Assembly (NCBI GenBank): GCA_030704615.1
Contig: CM060733.1
Span: 76,570,001-76,634,000 of the forward strand
From: Takakia lepidozioides
Taxonomy: Eukaryota; Plantae; Bryophyta
DNA: 64,000 nt
Reading direction: 5' to 3'
Positions 8,604 to 31,193 of this stretch are shown in pieces. The first letter of the stretch is position 1. Each line of letters begins with the position of its first letter. Below the pieces are notes generated by a model. It saw only the letters and a program-made list of their open reading frames with translations, ran no database searches and had not been told where the DNA came from. The translations under genes and the position numbers were made by a program.

Positions 8604-9413
8604 TAAGTAATAGTTCACACCAGTGTTGTGCAGGTTCTGCCTTTTTAAGCAACCCGCGGGGTCCGGGTGCGGGTTGTTTTTTGGAGCCAAGTCCGGGTCT
8701 GGATCCGGGTTTTAGAAATTTGGAAAATCCGGGTCCGGGTTTGTCAACACGGACTCGGGTTAGGGTCCGGGTAGTTGTTGGGAAATATTAGTGGGTTCAC
8801 GGTTCGGATCCGGGTCCTAATTAATTGATTAAATAAATTTAAAAAATAAGATTAATTAGGGATAAAATTATTTTTGGCTGAAAAAAACTTTAAATCCTAA
8901 TAATGAATTTTATTTTAAGAGTCATTCCTTCAAAATATACCATGAATAGGAATAGGTATATGTATACCATGAATAAGGATTAAAATAGAAGTTTGAGTTC
9001 CATTTTATATTTTTCAATTCTTTAAACATGTTAAGAATAGTAATATGTCTCAAGGATAGCATGGATTTGTGGGATCTGGCCTAATAATAATATATGATGC
9101 CTCCTTTGGGAGGTGTAAATTATGGTCCCATATGGCACAACTTTGTGACACCACTGTGTGGATTGAACCCACAACCGCTTTTGAGGTGGTATGTGGCCAT
9201 TACCACTGGGCTACAACGTGGTGGCTGCAGTGGCCTATTGCTGCTCCACACATAACCTACCAAACTAGGGCTTCGCGTTGCTCCGCACTACTAGCGACGA
9301 CTTCTGAGAAGGACGCCCGGACGGATGGGCCATACTGGAGGAACTTGAGAGAGAGTTGGAGGGGTTTTCCATGGGTTGTCTTGGTACAACAAGTAGATTT
9401 GGACTATGATAAA

Positions 9414-9893
9414 TCAGTATTTTTTTATTATCCGTTGTGAGCATGCATTGGAAAAATTCTTGTGACGGAAATTCATCCAATATCGGATGTTACACTTGAT
9501 TGCAACGAGATCCCCTGAACGTACGGATTGTCCATCCATTTTTTGGCCATTTTCGTTAAGGACTTCTATTGTATTGTACATCCCGTCATTGTTTGTTTTG
9601 TGACGTTTGTTGTTATTGGACGTCGATCCAGAGTTGTTTGTGTTGTTTTTTAGGAGCTTTTTCGTGAAGCTCATGTTGTTTTCACCCATCCACCTCGTGT
9701 CCTCGCCTCTCCTCTTCCAATGATCGGACCATTCCGTTATTGTATTTGCGTAGTCGAACTGGAAATGGCTGTCTTCTATCAATATTGTGAAGTTTGCGTC
9801 TTTTAGTTCTTCGGCGAAAGTCACGAATCTGTAATTCCCGGTTTTGCCAAGGTAGGGGAATTTTGCAATACCTACGAAGATACTTTGACGAGG
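9414..9893 (-). other. Orphan ORF fragment, weakly resembling phage gp2.5-type OB-fold ssDNA-binding proteins
   Basis: Open frame IFVGIAKFPYLGKTGN...FTILIED...MSFTKKL...IEVLNENGQKMDGQSVRSGDLVAIKCNIRYW. The family resemblance is by eye only. Confidence 0.3.
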
Positions 9894-10015
9894 TCATCAT
9901 GGACCTCTTTCCCCTTTTCCAGGGCTCCCAGGCTTGCATACACATTGCAAATGCAACCGAACGTGATGTGGTTGGGCTTCACCCCTTCACGCATCATTTG
10001 CTCATACGCCTGTAC
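9885..10015 (-). pseudogene. PLS-class PPR fragment (end of P motif plus L motif)
   Basis: YEQMMREGVKPNHITFGCICNVYASLGALEKGKEVHDDLVK, similar to the repeats at 16546-18334. Confidence 0.8.
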
Positions 10016-10334
10016 CTCTGTTTACTAACTTTGAAAGTTTCGAGGTTGAACCTCACCTTGAGTTAAAATTATAGTAGTGTCAAGGCTGCCCTTCACTCAT
10101 CCATGTTACAAACCGGAAATGAGTTCAGGGTTTTATGCCTAACTGTTGTTTGGACATTCTGCATTCTTCCAACATGGCCTTGGACACATCAGCTTTCCAA
10201 GTTAACTTTCAAGTCAACTTCATTTTAGTAGGGTCAGTTCCTCTTGCCTAATATTCAGGCACTTGAAATCTCCTCTTCCCGTTCTGCCAGGACTTCACCT
10301 GTTGGACTGGATGTTGGCAGATCCACTACTTTCG

Positions 10335-10515
10335 TCTCCAGACACAAAACTAATGGCCAGCTTCTCACTGTGGTGGCAAACAGAAAATTCCTTTTCTGTT
10401 TTTCTACAGCGACCTGGCTCATTTCTAACTCCTCTAACCTTCATCATTCTTCTCACCTTTGCAGTATTATCCCAATTACCAGCTGCAGCATAGATGGTTG
10501 ATAGCAACAACATCC
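10335..10515 (-). pseudogene. E-domain plus truncated DYW cytidine-deaminase domain remnant
   Basis: LLLSTIYAAAGNWDNTAKVRRMMKVRGVRNEPG (E2/PG box) joined directly to EKEFSVCHHSEKLAISF (DYW HxE motif). The CxxC motif and DYW terminus are absent. Confidence 0.8.
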
Positions 10516-10640
10516 AAAATCCAAGAGTATCACATTCCTGTTGGCTGAGGTAGAGGCATACACCTGAATGCCAAGCACCTGTTGCTTGTGCCCTAAGTCC
10601 AGCAGCAGATCTCGCAACTTCTGCTCTGACATACGTTTCT

Positions 10641-10952
10641 GAATCTGCTGAAATGCCTCCTTGGTTTAAAGTCTGTGGAAGAAGAGGAGGGTACATGAAA
10701 GGGTGCATGACTTGCCTGCGGATGCTGTCAACCTTCACTCCTATTCCAAGAGGAGCTTCTTTTTCCCCACACATATGCAGCCATCACAGCCTCCAAGAAT
10801 CTGCTGAAATGCCTCCTTGGTTTAAAGTCTGTGGAAGAAGAGGAGGGTACATGAAAGGGTGCATGACTTGCCTGCGGATGTTGTCAACCTTCACTCCTGT
10901 TCCAGGAGGAGCTTCTTTTTCCCCACACATATGCAGCCATCATAGCCTCCAA
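10641..10952. repeat. Near-perfect 156-bp (52-codon) tandem duplication
   Basis: gaatctgctgaaatgcctcc...agcctccaa at 10641-10796 and 10797-10952, with about 5 mismatches. Confidence 0.95.
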
Positions 10953-11100
10953 ACTGTCGGTGGTACCCTTGCCTGCTGTATCCATGAACCTTCTGATTGA
11001 TTTTTGGACAGTAGAGAAAGTAAACTTAGAAGAATGGAGGCTATAAATTCCACAGTTCCTATGCTCAATTGCGCCTGCTACTCTCTGTAATCTAACAGAC

Positions 11101-11950
11101 ATTCATCTTCTTGCCTCGATTGTCCCACCATTGACTGGGGTCAGAAAAGTATTCATTCCACAGCTTCTCCTCGTCTATGTTACCTGTTTCGGGATACTTT
11201 CTTGCTGTCACATTGGCAGTATCAATCCCACACGCATGTTGTGCATATCCTGCAATCATAGCACTCCATGATACCACATTTTGTTCAGCCATCCTGACGA
11301 ACACTCCCTTTGCATCTTCAGTGCTTCCGCCTTTGGCATACATGTCAATGAGGGCATTGTTTAGAATGACATCTGGTACAATTCCAGCTTTGACGATATC
11401 ACCATGGACCTCTTTGCCCTTTTCCAGGCTTGCACACACATTGAAAATGGAAATGAATGTGACCTGGTCTGGGTTCAACCCTTCCTGAATCATTTGCTCA
11501 TAGGTCTCCAAAGCCTTCATCCCGCACCCACGCTGAGCATATCCAGTGATCATTGCGTTCCACGAGATCACATCTCGTTCAGCCATCATTATATTCCACG
11601 TGATCACACCTTGTTCAGGCATTTTGTTGAACACTCAGTGTGCATCCACAATACTCCCACACTTCACATACATGTTAACAAGGGTGTTGCATAGAAAAAC
11701 GTTGGGCTTGAATCCACTTTGGATAATGTGAGCATGCACCTGTTTTCCGGCTTCTAGGCCTTTCATCTTGATGCACTTATGCAAGAGACAGACATAAGTA
11801 TCTAAATCTGCTGAATTTGCTGAAACCCTTCAAAATCTGTAGAGCCTCTTTCAGTTGCCATGCCTCACATAGCATCCTCACGTGCCCAGAAGTGCCAGAA
11901 GCGGTATTGTGGACTCCCTCTCTTGGTCCTCCCTTGGAAGCTGTGGCCAT
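11101..11950 (-). pseudogene. PLS-class PPR pseudogene copy B, fused at its 3' end to an OSB-type PDF-motif fragment
   Basis: Starts MATASKGGPREGVH...LCEAWQLKEALQIL, followed by a frameshift and stop, then PLS repeats (VISWNAMITGYAQ...LEKGKEVHGDIVKAGIVPDVILNNALIDMYAK). Ends in EEKLWNEYFSDPSQWWDNRGKKMN. Confidence 0.85.
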
Positions 11951-12288
11951 GGTGGAGCACCTGATTTCAAATATGCCGCTGCCGCTGTTTCCAGTTGACC
12001 ATCTACCCATGCAGGTTTCCTGTAGCTATCAATCCATAGGGAATCATGGGCACTATTGTGCCTGATATCCATCCCTCTTGGATGAATCTGGACCCACACT
12101 CTATCCCTGCTCTCCTTTAGCTATCCCTTACTCAGCACCATTAATGCATAGACCTTGCCCTTGCTGCTAGAAGCTGACAATGACAGCTGAATTTTTTCTA
12201 GCAAACACCCAAACCCTACTGATCACACACTAGCTCCTACTCTGAATTGGTCCCAAGACTTTAAAAATGTGCTGGGGAGAGATTGTAC

Positions 12289-15200
12289 TCATAAGACGTT
12301 GTTTGCCGTAGCCTTGTGGCCATTGACCCCGCGCCCAATTTGAGCGGGAACAAAAGGGACAGAACCTACCTCTGTCAGGGGCTGACGTTGGTAGTAAGAC
12401 TTACCTCCATATAAAGAATTAATCCGGGTTTTCCAGATATCCTCTAGAAATCCCTTCACACAAGCATCAATCTGCTGTGTGTGACTTGCCCAAAAACTAG
12501 ACCTCAGGAGGGCTTGGGCTTTTGGCTCAGCCTCGAGACTTTCAAAGTTGGTAAACAGGGGTACAGGCACAATTCCCTTAATAGATTTGAAGAGAGCGTC
12601 TCTTTGGTGAGAGAACCCCGGACAGTGTATCAGAAAATGAATACTGTCTTCAGATTGCCCACACAACGGGCAATTGCACTCTCCCTTTCCTCTCTGCTTC
12701 AGTTTGTTGTTCAAAGGTAGGCTTCCTGTCCTGAGTTTAAATTGCAGTCTAGTGCCGAGAGTGGGTAGACCCTTGAGGTCATCCAAGATGTCCTCCCCCA
12801 TGTCACAGACTGGAAACAAGTTCAGGGAAGTTTTCTGCCTAACTTCATTTTCATCAGACAATCTCATGGCAACAGACATGGCTGAGGACACTACAGCCTC
12901 TAAGTCAGATTTATCCAGCAGGGTCAAGACTTGCGGATCCAGGTCCAGGTCCTTGAGGATCTCTTCTACTCTCTTCTGCCAGGACTTAGCCTGTTTGACA
13001 GGGCGGTCCTGTTTCCAAGATATAGAGTCGATTAACTTAGGATATCTGGTGTTGGGCATATGTTGCAGCTGACCCCACCATCTGACCTAGAATTCATCTC
13101 GTCGGGAGCTTAAGGACGGAATGCCAAACTCACCCCGAACAGCCACATTGGCTGTTTTGGAGCATGCTGACATACACTCCTTAAGCACCCCCACTTGAAT
13201 GGATTCTAGAGACTTAGCCTGGTTGGAGTTATCAACCCATATAGCAGATCCGTACTCCAAGGCAGGTCTAATAATGCGACAAAGCATGGTTTTCTTAACC
13301 TCAGAGTTGACCCCTCTGCAGTGGAAAAATTTAGTGAGCCCCAGAGCTTTGCCCTTGCCAGTTTGAACAACTTTCCGGATATGTGCATCCCAATTACAAT
13401 TGGAGGAGAACTCAACGCCCAGGTAAGTGTAGGAAGGGAGGACCGGGATCTCTTAGCTACCCCACTGCCACTTAAGATCACTTCCTCCCTCTCCTCTGTC
13501 GTTGAATGCTACCACTGCACATTTGCTGACATTAGCCTCTAGCCCCCAAAGATCAAAGTATCTCTTCGCGCAATCAATCAACTCCTGGAGATTGGTTGGA
13601 GTCTCCCCTATGCCTGCGAAGTCATCCGCAAACATAAGGGCTGGTATGGTGGTATCACCCACCCTTAACCCAAATCCCTCACTTTCCACATCCTCGAGGA
13701 GTTGATTGATGAAAACATTGAAGAGCAGAGGGGAGAGAGTACATCCTTGAGCTACACCTTGGTCTATGTCAAAGAAGTTGGACTTCTGTCCGTTAACAGG
13801 GACACAGCTTTTGGTGTGAGCATACAAGTTGTGGACAACTCTCCACATCTTTCCCTTGATCCCACAAGACCAGAGGCGGAACCATAGGCCATCTCTCCAC
13901 ACTGTGTCATAAGCCTTTTTGACATCCAGGAAAAAAACTTAAGTGGGTTTCCCTTCTTTTTTCCTTCCCTGGATAATCTGGCTTAGAGTGAAGATATGAT
14001 CCACACAGCCCCTGTTTCGCCGAAAGCCAGCTTGGCCTTCGTGGAAACAACCTCTAGACTCCAGATCAACCTCGAGACGAGTACTTATAACTCTGCAGAA
14101 TGTCTTGCCAACAGCATTGAGGAGCGTGATGCCACGTAGTTCCCCGGTTCTTCTCTGTCACCCTTCTTGTATAGATTGACAATGACCCCCTGTCGCCAGC
14201 GAAAGGGGATCATTTCAGTCTTCCAGATAAGGTTAAAGAGGAGAACTAGGGCCTCTATCATGGGATCGCCACCGTGCTTAATAAGCTCGTTGACAATACC
14301 ATCAGGTCCACCAGCTTTATATCCATTTAAATGTTCAATTGCTTCCACAATCTCAGAAGAACTAATGGGAGCATTATAAGCCATTGAAATATACTCCAGT
14401 TCATCAGGGCTGTTTTGAATCATAGGAACGGTCCAACTTTGTCCCCATTCAGCAGAAGACCCCTCACTGTTAGACCTAGAAGTTCTGCCAAGGATACTGT
14501 AGTGAGTTTCAAAGGTTTTGACAATGTCAACCGATGAAGTCACCACGACACCTTTAGTAGTCTTCAGCGCTTGTACTTGCTGACCGTTTTTCGGCTTGTA
14601 CAAACGTTGAAGGGCCAACCAGAATTTCTTGTCATTACCACCATGGTGGTTTGAGTTTATTTCACTGTATAACTTGTCCCAGTATAATTTCTTCTGAGAC
14701 CTAACAAGCTGATTGATATCTTTACGGAGCTGGTAGTACCTCGCCCACAATTCTCTGTTGGTTTCCAAATTGCAGCACTCTTTATAGAGGGCTCGTCTCT
14801 CAGCTATCTTGAGTTTGATCTCATTGGTCCACCAATTAACTGCTCTACCGCAGACAATTAGTTTCCTCCCAATGATCTTGTCAGCCACGGAGGAAACGAA
14901 ACTCTCCCAAGAGTCCACTGCTCTTTCGACTTCATTTCTTGCGTTAACAGAGCGTGACTGAAGTTCTTGGAGCGATTGGACAAAATGAGGGAGAGCCTTT
15001 TGCAAGGCCTGGACGTACTCAGCCTTGACCTCCTCATTGTGGAATTCTTCTATGCGCTTCCGAATCGAACGTTTCACAGATCTCTTGGTGGTGGGAAAAC
15101 ACCTTTTGATCTCAGTCCAAACCAGGAAGTGGTCAGAGGTACCAATATCAGTTTTGTTGATCAACACATTGGCACACTGGGGGAACAAAATTTTGTCCAT

Positions 15201-16545
15201 TATGATATAGTCCACAATGGAACGTTCCCCAGTTTGGGATTTCTCACGAGTCCATTGCACTTGGTCACCACTTGTCCTGTTATTCAAGGTCAAAAGCTGA
15301 AGCTCTTCTAGACAGTTAATTAACCGTCTGCCATTAGAATTCAGCTCGTCCTCACCAAAAGGTCCAATGATATCGTCCTGATGGATCCCTTTGCAACCCG
15401 GGCATTGAAGTCCCCCAATAGTACCACCTGACCTTTGGCAAGGAACAAAGACAAAGAATCCGACCCCTTTTTGACCGCGTTTGGCAGAGGCTGCCTTGAG
15501 AGTACACATCTTACCTGCCCATTTATAACCAATGACATCTCCAACCAGTTTATTCGACGTTTCCCATGTTTCTTGCCCAGCACAGATATGAATATCATTA
15601 GTCCGAAGAACTTGTCCCACTTCAAGTTGTTTCCTTTGGTTGGTCAACCCTGAGAAGTTGAAAGTGGCCAGCCGCAAGCCAGCCCTTTGCGTGTGAATTG
15701 TTTGTCGTCTAGGTAGCTTGTGATTGCTCCTGGACGGCCAACCGTTCTGCAAAGGGTTGACAGTTACCCCATGTGTAGATTTTGCTCGTCTTGTGTAAAC
15801 TTTGAGAATTGGTAAACCATTCAGGGTACCAAATCTTTCAGTTACAGGACGCACAGGCTCCGCACACATAGGGGCAGATTGTCCGTCAGACTGCTTGGGG
15901 ACAATTACCCCGTGTATAGATTTTGCTCGTCTTGTAGACTTTGAGGATTGGTAAACCATTTAGAGTACCAAATCCTTCAGTTACACGACGTTCAGGCTCT
16001 GCACACTTAGGGACAGACTGTCCATCTGACGGCTTGGAGACAATTACCCCGTGTATAGAATTTGTTCGTCTTGTGTAAACCTTGAGGATTGGTAAGCCAT
16101 TCAGAGTACCAAATCCTTCAGATTCAGGACGTTCAGGTTCCGTACACTTAGGGGCATCTTGTCTTTCTGGCTGTTTGGATTCAACCTCATCCAGAGCATC
16201 AAACCGATTAGAAACTCTCAAGTTGAAGTTGTTGCCCTTGGTTGTCTTCCTAGAGCGCCCGTTTGAATCACCAATGTCTAAGACCGTTCTCCAGCCAGTC
16301 AAAGGGACGAAACTTCTTTGAGATTGAATTGATGCGGGACTCTATTAGAAGCACTTTTGGTCATTGCAACCTTCAACGTACCCCTGTTATCAAGTCTCGA
16401 GATGGTACCATTAGCCATGAAATCCAAGCCTAAGCTAGAGCATGTAGTTTTAAAGGACACATCGTCCATCCTGGGATTCACCCCAAAAACTACACATGAA
16501 GCCCTAGATTTGGCATAAGTAACCAATTCCCAGGGATCACCCTGA
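12289..16545 (-). mobile_element. Non-LTR retrotransposon (LINE, RTE/RTE-X-like), degraded: APE endonuclease, reverse transcriptase and C-terminal CCHC
   Basis: APE motifs ATFNFSGL, QETW, LLGDFNAR, VDYII and SDHFLV. RT motifs GPDGI, QAGFR, LDVKKAYDTV, GVAQGCTLSPLLF and FADD. CPLC..EDSIHFLIHC near the C-terminus. Several frameshifts and stops. Confidence 0.9.
15760..16160 (-). repeat. Three ~141-bp (47-aa) tandem repeats just upstream of the LINE endonuclease
   Basis: Unit KCTEPERPESEGFGTLNGLPILKVYTRRTNSIHGVIVSKPSDGQSVP. The middle copy has a 2-bp deletion. Confidence 0.85.
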
Positions 16546-18334
16546 GGCATACATGTCCAGGAGGGTATTGTTCAGAATGACATCTAGTACAATCCCAGCT
16601 TTGATGATGTCACCATGGACCTTCCTACCCTTTTCCAGGGTTGCCAGGCCCGCACACGCATTGCAAACACAAACAAATGTGACCCGGTTGGGCTTCACAC
16701 CTTCCTGCATCATTTGCTCATAAGTCTCCAAAGCCTCCATCCCACACCCATGCTGCACATATCCTGCAATCATCGAACTCCATGACACTACATCTCGTTC
16801 AGCCATATTGTCAAACTCTCCCTTTGCACCTCTGATGTTGCTGCATTTGGCATACATGTCCACAAGGGTATTGTTCAGAATCAGATCTGGTACGATTCCA
16901 GCTTTGATGATGTCTTCATGGACCTCTTTGCCTTTTTCCAGTGCTGACAGGCTCGCGCATGCATTGCAAATGCAAGTGAATGTGACCCGGTTGGGCTTCA
17001 CCCCTTCCTGCATCATTTGCTCATAGGTCTCCAAACCCTCCAGCTCATATCCATGCTGGGCATATCCTGCAATCATTATATTCCAGGACACTACATCCCG
17101 TTCAGCCATATTCTCGAACACTCCCTTTGCATCTCCACATTTGGCATACATGTCCATGAGGGCAGTGTTCAGAATGACATCTGATACAATTCCAGCTTTG
17201 ATAATCTCACCATGGACCTCTTTGCCCTTTTCCAGGGCTGCCAGGCTCACACATGCATTGCAAATACAAACAAATGTGGCCCGGTTGGGCTTCACCCTTC
17301 CTGCATCATTTGCTCATAGGTCTCCAAAGCCTCCATGCCACACCCATGCTGCACATATCCTGCAATCATCGCATTCCAGGACACCACGTCTCATTCGGTC
17401 ATATTTTTGAACGTTCCTTTGCATCTTCGATGCTGCCACATTGGGCATACATGTCCACGAGGGTAGTGTTCAGAATGACATCTGGTACAAGTCCAGCTTT
17501 GATTACATCACCATGGACCTCTTTGCCCTTTTCCAGGGCTGCCAGGCTCACACACGCATTGCAGACACACACAAATGTGATCCGGTTGGGCTTCACTCCT
17601 TCCTGCATCATTTGCTCATAGGTCTCCAAAGCCTCTATGCCACACCCATGCCTGACATATCCTGCGATTATTGCATTCCAGGACACCACATCCTGTGCAG
17701 CCATATTGTCGAACACCCCCTTTGCATCTTTGATGCTGCCGCATTTGTCATACATTCCCATGAGGGTTTTGTTCAGAATGACACCTGGTACAATTCCAGC
17801 TTTGATGATGTCACCATGGATCTCTTTGCCATTTTCCAGGGCTGCCAGGCTTGCACATGCATTGCAAACGCAAACGAATGTGACCCGGTTGGGCGTCACC
17901 CCTTCCTGCATCATTTGCTCATATGTCTCCAAGGCATTCTTACCACACCCATACTTGGTAAATCCTACCATCATTGTATTCCATGTGAACAAACCTCGTT
18001 CAGGCATTTTGTTGAACACTTGGTGTGCAGCCATGATGCTCCCGCATTAAACATACATGTTCACAAGGGTGTTCTGTAGAAAAACATTTGGTTTGAATCC
18101 ACTTTGGGTAATGTGAGAGTGCACCTGCTTTCCCATTTCCAGGCCTTTCATCTTGACGCACGCATGCAAGAGACAGACACAAGTATCTGTACCTGCTGAA
18201 ATGCTTCCTTGGTTCAAAATTTGAAGAGCCTCTTTCAGTTTCCCTGCCTCACATAGTGTCCTCATATACCCGGAATTTCCAGAAGAGGTCCTGTGGACTC
18301 CCTCTCTTGGTCCTCTTTTGGAGGTTGTGGTCAT
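16546..18334 (-). pseudogene. PLS-class PPR pseudogene copy A (~5 near-identical P-L-S triplets), truncated by the LINE
   Basis: ATG at 18334 (MTTTSKRGPREGVH...), TAA at 18049-47 and frameshifts near 17400 and 17295. The ~303-bp triplets read [74 protein letters not shown]. Confidence 0.92.
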
Positions 18335-19472
18335 TGTGAGAGTGCCTGATTTTATCAATTGTGCCCCTGCTGCTGCTTGCAGTTGACCATCTAATCATGC
18401 AGGTTTCTTGTAGCTATCAATAAGACGACCTCCCAAAACCAAGAAGACCCTCCCAAGTACCTTGTAAACACCAAGAAAAACCCTTGCGCAATGCAATTTC
18501 ATGGCCTGTTTAGGAACAACAACCTATGATACAGACAGGGACAGCCACTTTTGCAGAACAGAAAACCTTCTTCACATCATGTAAGAAGAAAGAGAGGCGT
18601 CCTAGGGGTAAACCCTCTAAACCTTGATATGTAGGTTGTCCCACCATTGTGAAGGATAAATATGCTCACCTTTTTCCCTGGGATTCTCACTGGAGAACGC
18701 TCTCCTGGATGCGCCGTTTGAAGAAATGCCCTCCGCACAGTCGAGCTCTGCCAAACCTATCTAAACCTATTCTAAATGCCAGGCCTTATCAACCTATGTA
18801 GCCATTGCGCTCGCGCTCTCTCTCTCTCTCCTTTGAACATTAAACAGAAGCAGGGAGGAAAAGGGTCAGTCTCGACGAAGTACCGTTCAAGAAGTTATTT
18901 TCGGATTTTTCGGGCAATCCGGGCAGATAGAAAGAAATTGACGACGTACGAAACGTGGCGACGACAGGTGGCTACGACACGTGGCAACGATGATGTGGCA
19001 CTATGGCACCCTATTCCTGCTCTATGCTAAACTAGCTCTCGACCTTCGGTTGTCGCTAGAATCTAAGGTGGACCCCACATACCCCATCTAAAAGTAAGAT
19101 CCGGACCTGACCTGCTACATTGGCCTGCCGGTAGGGGTTAACGGGTTCTGGACCCGGCAGGCGGGTCCGGGTGCAGGTAACCTGGATCCTAACCCACCCG
19201 CCTTCAAAACCCAGATCCGCACAACACTGGTTCACACATTCCCATCGTCAAGCTTTTCACTTGGATCACCAATTTGAGGTCTTTCTTTTAAAAAGGAACG
19301 AGAATGGTCATACTTTTGTGCCAACAGTTATACCAAATTTTTTAGTATAATAGAAATATGCAATGAGTTAAAATAATTTATAAATTGTATAAAGCTAACA
19401 AAGGGCTTCCTCCCCTTTTCCTCTAAAAGAAAACAAATTTCATTGTAAGAGATACCAAAAAGTAATAGCTAA

Positions 19473-26000: not shown

Positions 26001-28077
26001 CTCTCCACACACACCCAGCTTTTGTAAGAAAGCAATTGCTGAAGGAAATCTCCCATGAGGGATTGTATACGACTCATGACTGAAGGAATTCGCAGAGCTA
26101 CTCAATCATACTGAGTTACTCTAATAGTAGTCATTTTTTCGGAAAATGAAAATGTGGCAAAAAAGACTATTCTGTGCAATCATAGCACTGGGGTTCTTCA
26201 ATGCCACCAACTGGAAACCCGTGATACGCAGAGTGGCCACACTTTGTGGGCTAGATAGGATTGTGATATGGTAACGGTTTACGGCGTTGTTGAACCTAGG
26301 GCAGTGAAGCCTGTGGTTTCAATATCATTACTCATAGAAGACCCTTGATTTACAGAAGGACAGAAGACGGGGACATGATTGGATTTCAGTCACCTTGTTA
26401 CCTGATTGCTTACCCCATGTGAAAGTCCCAGCGCATTAGTCATGTAGATCCATAGAGGATCAACCTTCTTCGAAGTTCCACCAAGTTTCCTGAATTTGGT
26501 GAGTCTCCTTCGCAGTCTAACAGACAGATTTGGGTGGTTTGTGCAGCAATGGCAGCCGAATGCCATTAGAGAGCGTTATGCCCGCTCGGTGGTGGAGGTG
26601 CTTCGGATCATGGAGGAAACACTAGAAGCCTTTTTTGAACTACCTGTATCACAATACCCTGACCTCTTGCAAGACTTGGTGACCGGGTTAGATAAGGCGC
26701 TGCAGCGCTATGCTTCCCAAACTGTAGCCCCCTGTGGTATGCTCCCTTGCTCCATGATATTTAATACTCAAACTGGATTTAGACACCATGTTGTCAAATT
26801 CCTTGAAAGCTGATTCTTTGCTTGACTGTTTCTGGATCCGAGGACACTTCGTGGTTTTACAAGCACCTGTGCTGCTTTCAGAGCCAGCTGCCTTGCATGT
26901 AGTGATATACTTGTGCTCACTCAATTATGCTATGGGACAGTGCTTGCTCGGGTGACTTTCTGTGAGAGAAAATCCGCCTTGCAACTCCTCTTACTTCCAA
27001 TCTCAGCATCTTTACCTGCCTACTGACCTCTTTCCAACAGGCAGGATGAATTGGTAAGAGGAGGAAAGCGTTGATCCTTTTGTGCATCCCAACTCACAAA
27101 GATGGTATATCCTGCATGAACTGAAGGATAGAATCAAGCTACGCTGTGAACCTGATCTTTGACCTAAATGCTTCTCTATTCGGGTTTTTGCAGGCACCAA
27201 AGACTTGCACATTCCGTCTTTACCACCTCTCACACGATGCAAGACCAGCAGCAAGTCATGGCTTGGCTTGCACAAGAGCAAAGGGAGGGCTGAAGAAAGC
27301 AATGGCAGCACTACACACCGGGGGCCTGCTACTGGTGGGGATGCCTTCAGTCTGCCCTATCTATGTGTCCGCATCAATACCCTACAACACATCATCACAG
27401 AACTGGAGTTCATTGAAAAGAAGATCCGTTTTGGCTGGCAAAAAGACCCCACTGTTACGTCCAATGGTGGTAAAAGTGCTAAGAGTGCGAAGTCGAAACC
27501 TGCCGCTCCCCCTCCAGTTGCCTTATCAGTCGACAGCAGTTTCAAGAGAACAAGGGGGCAAGTCCAGGAGGGTGTCCAGCAGCTGATTGAACTTGCTGCA
27601 TATAGGGTTGCTTTCTCAGACTTAAGGGGTACATTTTGGGAGGGGCTTTATGTGGGAAGGGTGGCAAATGCCAGAATCTCTAGTGTTACTGAGCAGCTGG
27701 ACGCCAAATTAGGGATCATAGCTGACACTTCTTCAGATCGCCTAAGGAATCCTGTTGTGGGGGCCCTTATGCGGGCGTGCTTTGAATGTTTCCTGTTAGT
27801 TCTTTTGGCTGGCGGGCCATCTCGTGCATTCACAGTTAGCGACGCAGACATCCTTAAGGAGGATTTTGGAAACCTCAAGGACCTCTTCAAGGCTGATGGA
27901 GAGGGGTTGCCATCAGATGTGGTGGAAAAGGCAGCTGCCCGTGCAGCACAGGTCCTGTCGTTGTTTGATCTTCCCAGTAATGAGCTCATTGAAATTTTCA
28001 CATCTTTGGATGGGGTGGCAAGCAGATCAGGATCCAGACTCTCCCTTCCCCCGACTACAGGAGTTTGGAGCGCATCA
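22729..28077 (+). CDS. DUF810/Munc13-homology (unc-13/PATROL1-family) membrane-trafficking protein; 6 coding exons, 3' end lost in assembly gap
   Basis: Exons 22729-22837, 23153-23463, 24137-25003, 25522-25977, 26547-26736 and 27194->28077 have GT-AG borders and compatible phases. Motifs include DDLRETAYEILVA, SLTSAAASRVKKALG, LVPLELLQ, HWADGFPLNVYLY, WAEKRLLAYHDSF, LCVRINTLQHI, LLVLLAGGPSRAF and LPPTTGVW. Confidence 0.93.
22912..23001. repeat. (GA)45 microsatellite in intron 1 of the DUF810 gene
   Basis: Uninterrupted GA run. Confidence 0.98.
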
Positions 28078-28577
28078 NNNNNNNNNNNNNNNNNNNNNNN
28101 NNNNNNNNNNNNNNNNNNNNNNNNNNNNNNNNNNNNNNNNNNNNNNNNNNNNNNNNNNNNNNNNNNNNNNNNNNNNNNNNNNNNNNNNNNNNNNNNNNNN
28201 NNNNNNNNNNNNNNNNNNNNNNNNNNNNNNNNNNNNNNNNNNNNNNNNNNNNNNNNNNNNNNNNNNNNNNNNNNNNNNNNNNNNNNNNNNNNNNNNNNNN
28301 NNNNNNNNNNNNNNNNNNNNNNNNNNNNNNNNNNNNNNNNNNNNNNNNNNNNNNNNNNNNNNNNNNNNNNNNNNNNNNNNNNNNNNNNNNNNNNNNNNNN
28401 NNNNNNNNNNNNNNNNNNNNNNNNNNNNNNNNNNNNNNNNNNNNNNNNNNNNNNNNNNNNNNNNNNNNNNNNNNNNNNNNNNNNNNNNNNNNNNNNNNNN
28501 NNNNNNNNNNNNNNNNNNNNNNNNNNNNNNNNNNNNNNNNNNNNNNNNNNNNNNNNNNNNNNNNNNNNNNNNNNNNN
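28078..28577. other. Assembly gap (500 N)
   Basis: Run of N. Confidence 1.
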
Positions 28578-31193
28578 CATCTTGAGACGACCTATCAGGG
28601 GGCGTCTTGGATGATGAGGGAAGAGAATTCGTAGTGGCTTATGCCGGTCGAACAACGCTGCAGAGACTAAATTTAGCTCATATGAGGGAGAGTGTTTAGC
28701 TGCAGTGTGGGCCGTGGCACACTTCAGGTGCTATCTAAACGGTAATCTCTTCACCCTTGTCACGGATCACCAGCCACTCAAGTGGTTGATGGAGTCAGAC
28801 AAGCTTACGGAGAAGCTTGCATGGTGGGCACTCATACTTCAAGAATATGACTTTCACGTTGTGCATCAACCGGATTTGGTTAATCGGGATGCGGATAGGT
28901 TGAGTCGCAATCCATGCATGAGCCAGCAGGATGACACTGGAGCTCGGTGGCATGGTGAGACGGACGAGGAGATGGTGCCCGGATGGCACACATCTTCATT
29001 TCCGTGTATCTTGGCAGCGGAAGGGCAGGTTGGACGTACAACAGGGATGACTGTAAGCCGAGTGTCTGAGGACCCTGAGGCCAGCGATGAGCCACGTGGC
29101 ACTAGAGATATACATGAGGATTCAGATGTGTTGGACTATCTCCGCACTGGAGACACAGCAGCCACTGTAACTGCCAAAGAGAAGGATCGGATCCTACAAC
29201 GAGCCAAGAGGTTCAAGTGGGAGGGGACACACCTACTCCGAGTATGGGAGGATGATCGAGTGAGGATTGTGCCTCACCCAGCACAGCGGGCACGGTTAGT
29301 GCGGCATGCCCATGAGGAGTTGGGGCATTTTGGGGTGCGACGCACCCATAGTCTACTGCAGTGGCAGTATTGGTGGCATGGTATGCACACAGAGGTGCAA
29401 CAATTTGTGGCTAGGTGCATGGTATGTGACAGGGTGCGTGCTTTATTTAACGCCCCTACACCACAATTACACCCTCTTCCGATCATGGGATTGGGCTACA
29501 GGTGGAGTCTTGACTACGCAGGGCCGTTGCCACCCACAACAAGTACGTGTTGGTGATGGTGGAGCACTTCTCCAAGTGGATCGAGTTGGTTCCATTGCCT
29601 GATAAAGCTAGTGAGGGAGCTGCGTATGCATTCTTGGATCGTGTACTTAGCCGATTCGGTGCTCCAACTGAGGTACTCACGGATCAAGGGAGAGAGTTCT
29701 TGGGGGAGTTTCAGGCGTTGTGTGACAAGGCCTTATTAGACCATCGCACCACTTCTCGGGATCATCCTCAGGCCGATGGCTTGGCAGAGAGGGTTGTGCA
29801 AACGGTTAAGAGGGGTTTGCGCAAGTATGGCTTGCAGAAGAGACACCTTAGAGATTGGGACCTTCAGCTACCCTGGTTAGCCATGGGCTACAGGTTCAGC
29901 AAGCAAGCATCACTCGTTCTCGCCTTATTTCCTTCTCTTTGGCCGAGAGCCAGATGTGTCTGCATCTATTCGCAGGGAGGTTGCAGTAGTCCTCAATCCT
30001 GACAATCCGGATGTGTGGGATGTGTATGTGGTCAGCGCGTGGAATTGTTCAAGAAAGTCATGCCCATGGCGAACCTTGCCATTTGCACAATATCGTGATA
30101 CGTTGAGGTATGCTATTATACGTGGTGGGGGCTATCGTCCTGGGGTTCGGAGATTTCACCCTGGTGACTATGTTTATCTGCAGCAGACTGCTCCAACGAC
30201 CCTGGATGTGACTACAGGATGTGTTATTTCGAGAGGTATTGCCCTCAGGCGTCCTGATCTTGGAGGGTCGGGATGACATGACTTGGAAAGACCATGTGCA
30301 TAATTGCGCGCCATGTCACCTTCCGAATGTCGATGGCAGGATTGACCCAAACCTGGCAGTGGTACCTACAAGTTTGAGGTGCATGTTATGTGGGTCTACT
30401 AGAGGGGCAGCCACCATGCTGGTGTGTGATCGATGCTCTAGAGGTTGGCATATGGGATGCTTGACTCCACCTCTTGAGATGGTTCCTGATAGGGATTGGT
30501 TATGTCTGCATTGCATTGGATAGTGGGAGTGGATACAACCATGGAAGGCTAACAAGAATGCAAGGCCAAGCTACTAGGAGACCAACACACGAGATTCTGG
30601 CTCAAGTTCACAGATTGCAAGACGACGACTAACGATGGGACTACTCTTGTACCCGGCCTCTTGGTCTGTAGAGTTTGAGTACAATAGGAACAGTGATAGA
30701 GGACTTAGTACGGCTGTGGCTATTACATCTTGTAGCTATCTGGAGTTAAAAGGACCTAACCACCAGCTAGGGGGGCGATTGTGATAGACTACTTTATTGT
30801 GCATATATGTGTGGTGTGGTTTGGACATCGATGTAGTTGTGTAGTGATACGTATGCGCACGACAGCTGTCAAGTTAAATAAACACAGTGTGAAACTAACT
30901 AGAATAAATCTAGTTATTTGTATTTAACACTTGAAATTAGTTCAAATGTTAAGTCAGGTGTCAAGATTAGCTTGACACCTGAACCATCTTATCTTCACGA
31001 GCTCGTCAGTCGTGCGGCTCATCTCTCTCGAGTTGAGCCTGCACGACCGAGCTCCCTCACTGCTTAACATCTGAGTGTACTTATGGAGGGAGAGTAGGAT
31101 GTTGTGGGGTGGAGTCCCCATAGCTTGGGGTGCCCCTGGCTCGACTCTTATTTTAACGAGTGATTGTGTTGTGTTTGTGTTTCTATGTCATCA
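28578..31193 (+). mobile_element. 3' half of a Ty3/Gypsy LTR retrotransposon: RNase H, integrase, C-terminal PHD finger, PPT and 3' LTR
   Basis: RNase H SSYEGECLAAVWAVAHFR...LVTDHQPLKWL; HHCC zinc finger HEELGHFG...CMVC; integrase core WSLDYAGP / LTDQGREF / GLAERVVQTVK; PHD CMLC...CDRC..GWHMGC...WLCLHC; PPT agggggg at ~30769-30775. Frameshifted. Confidence 0.92.
30780..31193 (+). repeat. Putative 3' LTR of the Gypsy element
   Basis: Begins TGTGATAG just after the PPT and ends ...CTATGTCATCA. The right boundary is approximate. Confidence 0.6.

What the first reader, a model, noticed from the sequence alone, without database searches (positions are those of the whole stretch)
8621..19229. Pack-hAT carrying a co-oriented assembly of RNA-editing-factor (PLS-PPR/E/DYW) parts
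Seen: an 11-bp TIR and a perfect 8-bp TSD (GTTCACAC) bound 10.6 kb with no transposase. On the minus strand the cargo is, in order: leader plus PPR-A (5 PLS triplets), a LINE, leader plus PPR-B, an OSB-like motif, the N-terminal piece of a third PPR (QTLNQGGISADSETYV), an E+DYW remnant, a PPR fragment and an orphan ORF. Established: PLS-E-DYW proteins are organellar C-to-U editing specificity factors, and Pack-type TIR elements capture and shuffle host genes. Inference: DNA transposons are copying and recombining editing-factor modules, a possible route to PPR family expansion in a heavily editing lineage.
Basis: partly seen in the sequence, partly recalled or inferred. Interest (0 to 1): 0.9.

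Follow-up and report, generated by a model that had tools for sequence, protein, structure and literature searches.

The report
hAT transposon carrying dead PPR genes
A 10.6-kb cut-and-paste (hAT-type) transposon without its own transposase carries three broken, same-direction copies of one plant RNA-editing-factor gene family; it is a real but fairly ordinary case of a transposon carrying host gene copies, and none of those copies can work.

Summary
An exact 11-bp inverted repeat and an exact 8-bp duplication (GTTCACAC) bound window 8621-19229. TIR start, duplication pattern and CCGGGT-rich subtermini fit a hAT element; no transposase was found inside. All cargo lies on the minus strand: PLS-type PPR arrays A and B, an E/DYW remnant, a PPR fragment, a LINE and an ORF without relatives.

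The interpretation needs correcting. The "OSB-like motif" and the "leaders" are not separate captured parts. They are the native 5' exons of one gene family: PPR proteins with an N-terminal OSB-type PDF motif, annotated in the lycophyte Diphasiastrum complanatum. There the motif's first half is its own exon, and two window copies keep its splice donor.

The cargo is therefore three degenerate, internally deleted tandem copies of one family, copied as DNA rather than as retrocopies. It is not a shuffle of unrelated modules. All copies are pseudogenes.

It is a new member of a known kind (Pack-hAT). First-stage notes, unverified, report similar PPR-bearing TIR elements elsewhere in this genome. 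One lies in this window, and I checked its ends.

The parts
8613..8620 (.). left target-site duplication GTTCACAC
   Evidence: identical to 19230-19237; fits the hAT pattern nTnnnnAn (established knowledge)
8621..8631 (+). left TIR CAGTGTTGTGC
   Evidence: starts CAGTG, which fits the hAT YARNG rule
8632..8830 (+). left subterminal region with 7 CCGGGT hexamers
   Evidence: 7 of the window's 12 plus-strand CCGGGT lie at 8663-8810. GGATCYGGGTTTT is shared with the right end
9150..9235 (-). tRNA-like stretch with A- and B-box-like motifs, possibly a SINE head
   Evidence: read; fold shows acceptor and T arm. ARAGORN and Rfam are negative, so this is tentative
9414..9824 (-). 136-aa ORF without relatives, probably not a gene
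   Evidence: no Pfam family; no homologue
9883..10006 (-). isolated PPR fragment (part of one PLS unit)
   Evidence: 80-85% identical to PPR-A units
10346..10513 (-). copy C: E2 motif (10409-10513) and about 20 aa of DYW domain (10346-10405), with the PG-box region deleted between them and the C-terminal half missing
   Evidence: Pfam E_motif E 4.4e-7; tblastn to a D. complanatum E-DYW product, residues 44-78, and to P0057 residues 336-355; no Pfam DYW hit
10641..10952 (-). 156-bp tandem duplication (97%) holding the N-terminal PPR piece of copy C (QTLNQGGISADS)
   Evidence: 10628-10670 matches 18176-18218 at 84%
   Evidence: tblastn against D. complanatum P0162 and P0121, 78% over 18 aa, E 1e-7 to 4e-8; aligned
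11222..12081 (-). copy B: second half of the PDF motif (11965-12081, degenerate), N-terminal PPR and about 3 PLS motifs, with stops
12289..16545 (-). LINE (endonuclease, RT, zf-RVT; 139-bp tandem repeat at 15759-16179). Exact ends not determined, and no TSD of 8 bp or more was found
16546..18421 (-). copy A: N-terminal leader (18150-18421) and 5.1 PLS triplets. It has one in-frame stop and two frameshifts, and ends abruptly at the LINE
18422..18480 (-). piece shared with the second element (60318-60376, 81%). In D. complanatum a weakly similar stretch lies upstream of the PDF exon
18621..18657 (-). copy A: PDF first-half exon, degenerate, followed by AAG|GT
   Evidence: 84% to L003 10218-10254; alignment; core CAATGGTGGGACAA
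19080..19218 (-). right subterminal region (CCGGGT/ACCCGG variants)
19219..19229 (-). right TIR
19230..19237 (.). right target-site duplication GTTCACAC

Best explanation
Window 8621-19229 is a non-autonomous hAT-superfamily transposon. A hAT transposase encoded elsewhere would bind the 11-bp TIRs and the CCGGGT-type subterminal repeats, cut the element out and paste it in, which made the 8-bp duplication (inferred).

Its interior is a decayed tandem cluster of three partial copies (A, B, C) of one host gene family. That family is PLS-class PPR(-E-DYW) proteins with an N-terminal OSB-type PDF motif. The copies were made as genomic DNA: two PDF-exon copies in the window (copy A here and one in the second element at 57845-60697) still keep the exon's splice donor.

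The cluster got between the hAT ends in one of two ways. Two neighbouring ends may have mobilised the DNA between them. Or the element captured one gene, and unequal recombination among the 303-bp PLS repeats followed. A LINE, and perhaps a SINE, also sit inside.

All PPR copies are pseudogenes, so the element has no editing function. It shows that PPR gene DNA can be moved by a cut-and-paste element.
For: - Exact TIR and TSD are present. Such a pair arose by chance in 1 of 100 simulated windows.
- The TIR starts CAGTG, and the TSD has T at position 2 and A at position 7.
- Seven of the window's 12 plus-strand CCGGGT hexamers lie within 190 bp of the left TIR, and the GGATCYGGGTTTT motif is shared by both ends.
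- No transposase domain was found.
- The cargo is PPR, E and a DYW remnant.
- D. complanatum PPR proteins P0121, P0162 and P0270 carry the motif EQLWQEFF.DP.QWWDNR..KKSPKYPDFKHK.
- The window matches the motif's first half at 11169-11116, 18655-18605 and 60092-60030, and its second half at 12081-11965.
- In locus L003 the first half is a separate exon ending AAG|GT, and it is present three times in tandem. Window copies A and D keep AAG|GT.
- Pack-hAT elements, and acquisition by mobilising DNA between neighbouring insertions, are described in PMC8903248.
Against: - No second copy of the ends exists in the window or in 54 kb of D. complanatum PPR loci. The element is a singleton as far as I could see, and packFinder would discard singletons.
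- The right subterminal region has only two exact hexamers.
- No donor gene closer than about 55% protein identity was found.
- The LINE has no detectable TSD, so its timing is open.
Confidence: 0.7

Rival explanations
1. Serial capture and shuffling: the hAT element picked up separate modules from several different genes, such as PPR arrays, an OSB gene piece and an E-DYW piece, and recombined them into a new arrangement.
For: Homology blocks end sharply: A/B at 18421|12033, and A/second element at 18422-18480. B runs straight into the next copy's PDF exon in one ORF. The interior holds deletions and a tandem duplication.
Against: All modules belong to one annotated gene family and stand in its native order: PDF exon, leader, PLS, E, DYW. 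The apparently swapped order of pieces is explained by tandem PDF exons in the native gene. No OB-fold or SSB domain of an OSB gene is present.
Confidence: 0.12
2. Nested arrival: a small hAT element inserted here first, and the PPR material came in later inside other mobile DNA or by local duplication. The hAT element then never moved the PPR copies.
For: At least one later insertion (the LINE) is inside. A second TIR element with the same kind of cargo lies 39 kb away.
Against: No internal TIR-plus-TSD pair bounds any PPR piece. No poly-A or retrocopy marks were seen, and the introns are retained.
Confidence: 0.1
3. Chance ends: this is a decayed tandem PPR pseudogene cluster in its original place, and the 11-bp inverted repeat with matching 8-mers is coincidence.
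For: About 1 window in 100 gives such a pair by chance. The scan read thousands of windows, so some chance pairs are expected. No second family copy was seen.
Against: Independent hAT hallmarks coincide: the CAGTG start, the nTnnnnAn TSD, a CCGGGT cluster right next to the TIR, and a shared subterminal motif at both ends.
Confidence: 0.08

Closest known systems
Pack-hAT / Pack-TYPE transposons of maize and rice (Gisby and Catoni 2022, PMC8903248)
   Same: A transposase-less element with TIRs and an 8-bp TSD, holding host gene sequence. The proposed acquisition, mobilising DNA between neighbouring ends, is the same.
   Different: The host is lycophyte-like. The cargo is several tandem copies of one family rather than fragments of different genes. 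Family membership (two or more copies) is not shown. At 10.6 kb the element is large.
Ac/Ds of maize (hAT)
   Same: 8-bp TSD, an 11-bp TIR starting CAG, and short subterminal hexamer repeats of the kind that bind transposase in Ac/Ds.
   Different: The hexamer is CCGGGT rather than AAACGG. No autonomous partner is known here.
PDF-motif PPR proteins of Diphasiastrum complanatum (O6H91_21G032400, O6H91_Y458200)
   Same: The N-terminal PDF motif is split by an intron after WWDNR..K, and is followed by an N-terminal PPR and regular PLS triplets.
   Different: The window copies are 45-57% identical at protein level and are broken by stops, frameshifts and deletions. None has a complete E-DYW.
Retroposition model of PPR expansion in early land plants (PMC13386178)
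   Same: It also explains dispersed PPR duplicates flanked by transposable elements in lycophytes.
   Different: Here two PDF-exon copies keep the splice donor of an exon-intron boundary, there is no poly-A, and the copies lie inside a DNA transposon. The duplication was therefore at DNA level.

Membership tests
hAT superfamily, non-autonomous element | 8-bp target-site duplication | tested here: met
   GTTCACAC on both sides, exact
hAT superfamily, non-autonomous element | TSD pattern nTnnnnAn and short TIR starting YARNG | tested here: met
   The TSD has T at position 2 and A at position 7, and the TIR starts CAGTG (read). The rules themselves come from established knowledge, not from a tool
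hAT superfamily, non-autonomous element | short repeated subterminal motifs at both ends | tested here: met
   Seven CCGGGT within 190 bp at the left end, two at the right, and a shared GGATCYGGGTTTT motif. The right end is weaker
hAT superfamily, non-autonomous element | autonomous partner with BED/DDE/hATC transposase and the same ends | not testable with these tools
   None inside; no plant genome search was available
Pack-TYPE (Pack-hAT) as in PMC8903248 | no transposase, and host gene-derived interior | tested here: met
Pack-TYPE (Pack-hAT) as in PMC8903248 | belongs to a cluster of two or more elements (singletons are discarded) | not testable with these tools
Functional PLS-E-DYW editing factor | uninterrupted reading frame through the PLS array, E1/E2 and DYW | tested here: not met
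   Stops and frameshifts in A and B; C lacks the PLS array
Functional PLS-E-DYW editing factor | DYW deaminase domain with HxE and CxxCH | tested here: not met
   Only about 20 aa around HSE are present; no Pfam DYW_deaminase hit
PDF-motif PPR gene family | N-terminal PDF motif, first half on its own exon, then PLS repeats | tested here: met
OSB (organellar ssDNA-binding) gene fragment | OB-fold/SSB domain next to the PDF motif | tested here: not met
   No SSB or OB-fold hit in any ORF. The motif's context is PPR, as in D. complanatum PPR proteins

The most novel reading that the evidence does not exclude
In this lycophyte-like genome, cut-and-paste transposons (hAT and other TIR families) may be a regular vehicle that copies and disperses intron-bearing PDF-PPR-DYW genes. 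That would be a DNA-level route to PPR family growth, beside or instead of the retroposition route proposed in 2026. Two such elements lie in this one window, and many unverified first-stage notes in the same genome point the same way.
Probability: 0.2. Interest if true: 0.65.

Novelty: new member of a known kind. Interest (0 to 1): 0.36.

Why it matters
PPR-DYW proteins decide which organellar RNA sites are edited, and the family has grown to thousands of genes in lycophytes, hornworts and some mosses. A recent survey (PMC13386178) attributes that growth to retroposition.

This locus is a clear single case of PPR gene DNA sitting inside a DNA transposon with a splice donor of its 5' exon structure retained. 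If such elements prove common and sometimes carry intact genes, the account of how editing-factor families expand would need a second mechanism. As it stands, the locus is one dead element.

Tried and rejected
There is therefore no test of misassembly, copy number, empty site or expression.
- Other copies in the window: none found for either end, and the flanks are unique.
- Exact-protein look-ups of window ORFs: not on record. Several D. complanatum proteins were also not on record.
- Three D. complanatum PPR loci (L001-L003): they share only 65-73% PPR DNA with the window, with no hAT ends and no TIR-plus-TSD pair. The species of the window is therefore not proven. It has Lycopodiaceae affinity, based on best protein hits at 55-57%.
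- Orphan ORF: no homologue.
- OSB motif: the Atlas look-up, a paper search for WWDNR and a region search (timed out, blank) gave nothing.
- tRNA/SINE idea: ARAGORN and Rfam negative, and the fold is not better than shuffles.
- LINE target-site duplication: none of 8 bp or more.
- A Pfam Transpos_assoc hit (38.7 bits summed, no single passing stretch) on PPR ORF 16537-17295: I take it as a repeat-summing artefact of the Cys-rich PPR motif, not as a transposase.
Full report
**1. The observation**

The left end reads TSD GTTCACAC (8613-8620) followed by CAGTGTTGTGC (8621-8631). The right end reads the reverse complement of the same 11-mer (19219-19229), followed by GTTCACAC (19230-19237).

I counted every perfect 11-bp inverted pair within 20 kb that is flanked by a perfect 8-bp direct repeat, with low-complexity sequence and a 500-N gap masked. 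The window holds two: this one and 57845-60697. One such pair appeared in 100 first-order Markov simulations. With thousands of windows scanned, that alone would not be enough.

Several independent hAT hallmarks coincide, however:
- The TIR starts CAGTG, which fits the YARNG rule.
- The TSD has T at position 2 and A at position 7, which fits nTnnnnAn.
- Seven of the window's twelve plus-strand CCGGGT hexamers lie at 8663-8810, right next to the left TIR.
- The right end has two exact hexamers plus variants.
- Both ends share GGATCYGGGTTTT just inside the TIR.

I take the ends as real hAT-type ends, with a probability of about 0.9.

**2. The cargo**

Everything recognisable lies on the minus strand.

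- PPR-A (16546-18421) is an N-terminal leader plus 5.1 copies of a 303-bp (101-aa) PLS triplet at 82% identity. It has one in-frame stop and two frameshifts, and it stops abruptly at the LINE.
- The LINE (about 12289-16545) has a reverse-transcriptase domain (E 2.4e-16) and weak endonuclease and zf-RVT matches. It also has a 139-bp tandem repeat near its 5' end. I found no target-site duplication for it, so whether it arrived before or after the hAT element's last move is open.
- PPR-B (11222-12081) shares the leader with A (81% over 273 bp) and has about three PLS motifs and several stops.
- Next comes a ...FSDPSQWWDNRGKK stretch (11116-11169).
- A 156-bp tandem duplication (10641-10952, 97%) holds the QTLNQGGISADS piece.
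- An E motif follows (Pfam E 4.4e-7), then about 20 aa of DYW domain around HSEKLAISF. These match a D. complanatum E-DYW product and P0057, but Pfam does not detect DYW_deaminase.
- A 124-bp PPR fragment lies at 9883-10006.
- A 136-aa ORF (9414-9824) has no family and no homologue.

No ORF shows a transposase domain.

**3. What the "leader" and the "OSB-like motif" are**

The closest annotated proteins come from the lycophyte Diphasiastrum complanatum, at 55-57% identity for the PLS array and 47% for the N-terminus.

D. complanatum PPR proteins P0121, P0162 and P0270, and two JGI proteins, carry EQLWQEFF.DP.QWWDNR..KKSPKYPDFKHK..EGLWIES.LNPPWVK near the N-terminus. This is the PDF motif that defines OSB proteins, about 50 aa long and present in one to three copies (PMC6963530).

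tblastn places the parts of the motif as follows:

| Part of the motif | Window position | Match |
|---|---|---|
| First half | 11169-11116 | 78% over 18 aa, E 1e-7 |
| First half | 18655-18605 | weak: 59% over 17 aa, E 0.2 |
| First half | 60092-60030 | 52-57% over 21 aa, E 8e-4 to 3e-3 |
| Second half, degenerate | 12081-11965, inside B's "leader" | E 2e-5 |

In the D. complanatum locus L003 (gene O6H91_Y458200) the first half is a separate small exon, CAG|G...WWDNRLMK|GT. An intron follows, and the next exon starts at SPKYPDFKHK. Two further copies of that exon stand in tandem about 0.8 and 1.8 kb upstream. The window copies at 18621-18657 and 60030-60092 still end in AAG|GT.

So the OSB-like motif and the leaders are the native 5' exons of one gene family, and the copies were made from genomic DNA, not from mRNA. 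The seemingly swapped order of the 18422-18480 piece and the PDF exon between this element and the one at 57.8-60.7 kb is what tandem PDF exons in the native gene would give.

**4. Resulting anatomy**

Read on the minus strand, the element holds three copies:
- Copy A: PDF exon, intron remnant, leader and five PLS triplets, then truncated.
- Copy B: second PDF half, leader and three PLS motifs, then truncated.
- Copy C: PDF exon, a duplicated leader tail, the whole PLS array deleted, then E2 and a DYW fragment.

A stray PLS fragment follows. These are three co-oriented, degenerate, internally deleted tandem copies of one PDF-PPR-E-DYW family. Co-orientation therefore needs no special explanation.

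**5. Mechanism**

Shown:
- hAT-type ends and TSD.
- No transposase inside.
- Host-gene cargo with a retained splice donor.
- All copies dead.

Inferred:
- The whole unit was pasted here by a hAT transposase supplied in trans.
- The cluster came to lie between the ends in one of two ways. Two neighbouring hAT ends may have mobilised the DNA between them, a route documented for Pack-TYPE elements (PMC8903248). Or one gene was captured and unequal recombination followed among the very similar 303-bp repeats.

**6. What could not be done**

No tool here searches a plant genome.

Copy number of the family, an empty site, misassembly and expression therefore remain untested. The second copy that the published Pack-TYPE pipeline demands is not shown.

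No close donor gene was found. The window's species is not proven, because three fetched D. complanatum loci share only PPR similarity of 65-73% with it.

**7. Comparison and novelty**

Pack-hAT elements are known from maize (PMC8903248). The 2026 survey of editing factors ascribes PPR expansion in lycophytes to retroposition and reports mostly LTR elements near the duplicates (PMC13386178). It does not use the word 'transposon', and the passages I read describe no DNA-transposon carriage.

This locus is a new member of a known kind. It is a single counter-example to a purely retropositional picture, but it carries only pseudogenes.

The second 8-bp-TSD element in this window (TIR CCTGGGGGGTGCAC, TSD CTAGTTGC) carries pieces of the same family. 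Several unverified first-stage notes report PPR-bearing TIR elements elsewhere in this genome. This keeps open, at about 0.2, the wider reading that DNA transposons regularly move PPR genes here.

Noticed in passing
window 57845-60697: A second element with a 14-bp TIR (CCTGGGGGGTGCAC) and an exact 8-bp TSD (CTAGTTGC). On its minus strand it carries a PDF exon (60030-60092), a piece shared with copy A (60318-60376) and short PPR-unit repeats (58671-59921). It was already noted as s1-476553.
   Followed up: partly
window 53100-54700 (+): A further PLS-PPR pseudogene with an E motif, about 68% identical in DNA to PPR-A and with many frameshifts. No TIR-plus-TSD pair that I could find encloses it.
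   Followed up: partly
L003 8368-10275 (D. complanatum MU835231.1): Three tandem copies of the small PDF-motif exon (each CAG|...WWD(N/K)R..K|GT) lie upstream of PPR gene O6H91_Y458200. This suggests PPR proteins with several PDF motifs, or alternative first exons.
   Followed up: partly
window 28081-28580: A 500-N assembly gap lies between a PATROL1-like exon (27205-28080, Pfam E 3e-81) and an LTR-retrotransposon RNase H/integrase ORF (28705-29556).
   Followed up: no
window 9150-9235 (-): A tRNA-like stretch with A-box and B-box-like motifs inside the element, possibly a SINE head. ARAGORN and Rfam do not call it.
   Followed up: partly
window 16537-17295 (-): Pfam Transpos_assoc (PF13963) scores 38.7 bits summed over the PLS repeats, with no single passing stretch. 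This is probably an artefact of the Cys-rich PPR motif and could mislead automatic transposon annotation.
   Followed up: no
window 15759-16179: The LINE's 5' region holds three tandem 139-bp units (84% identical) that repeat a 47-aa peptide (...GFGTLNGLPILKVYTRR...).
   Followed up: no
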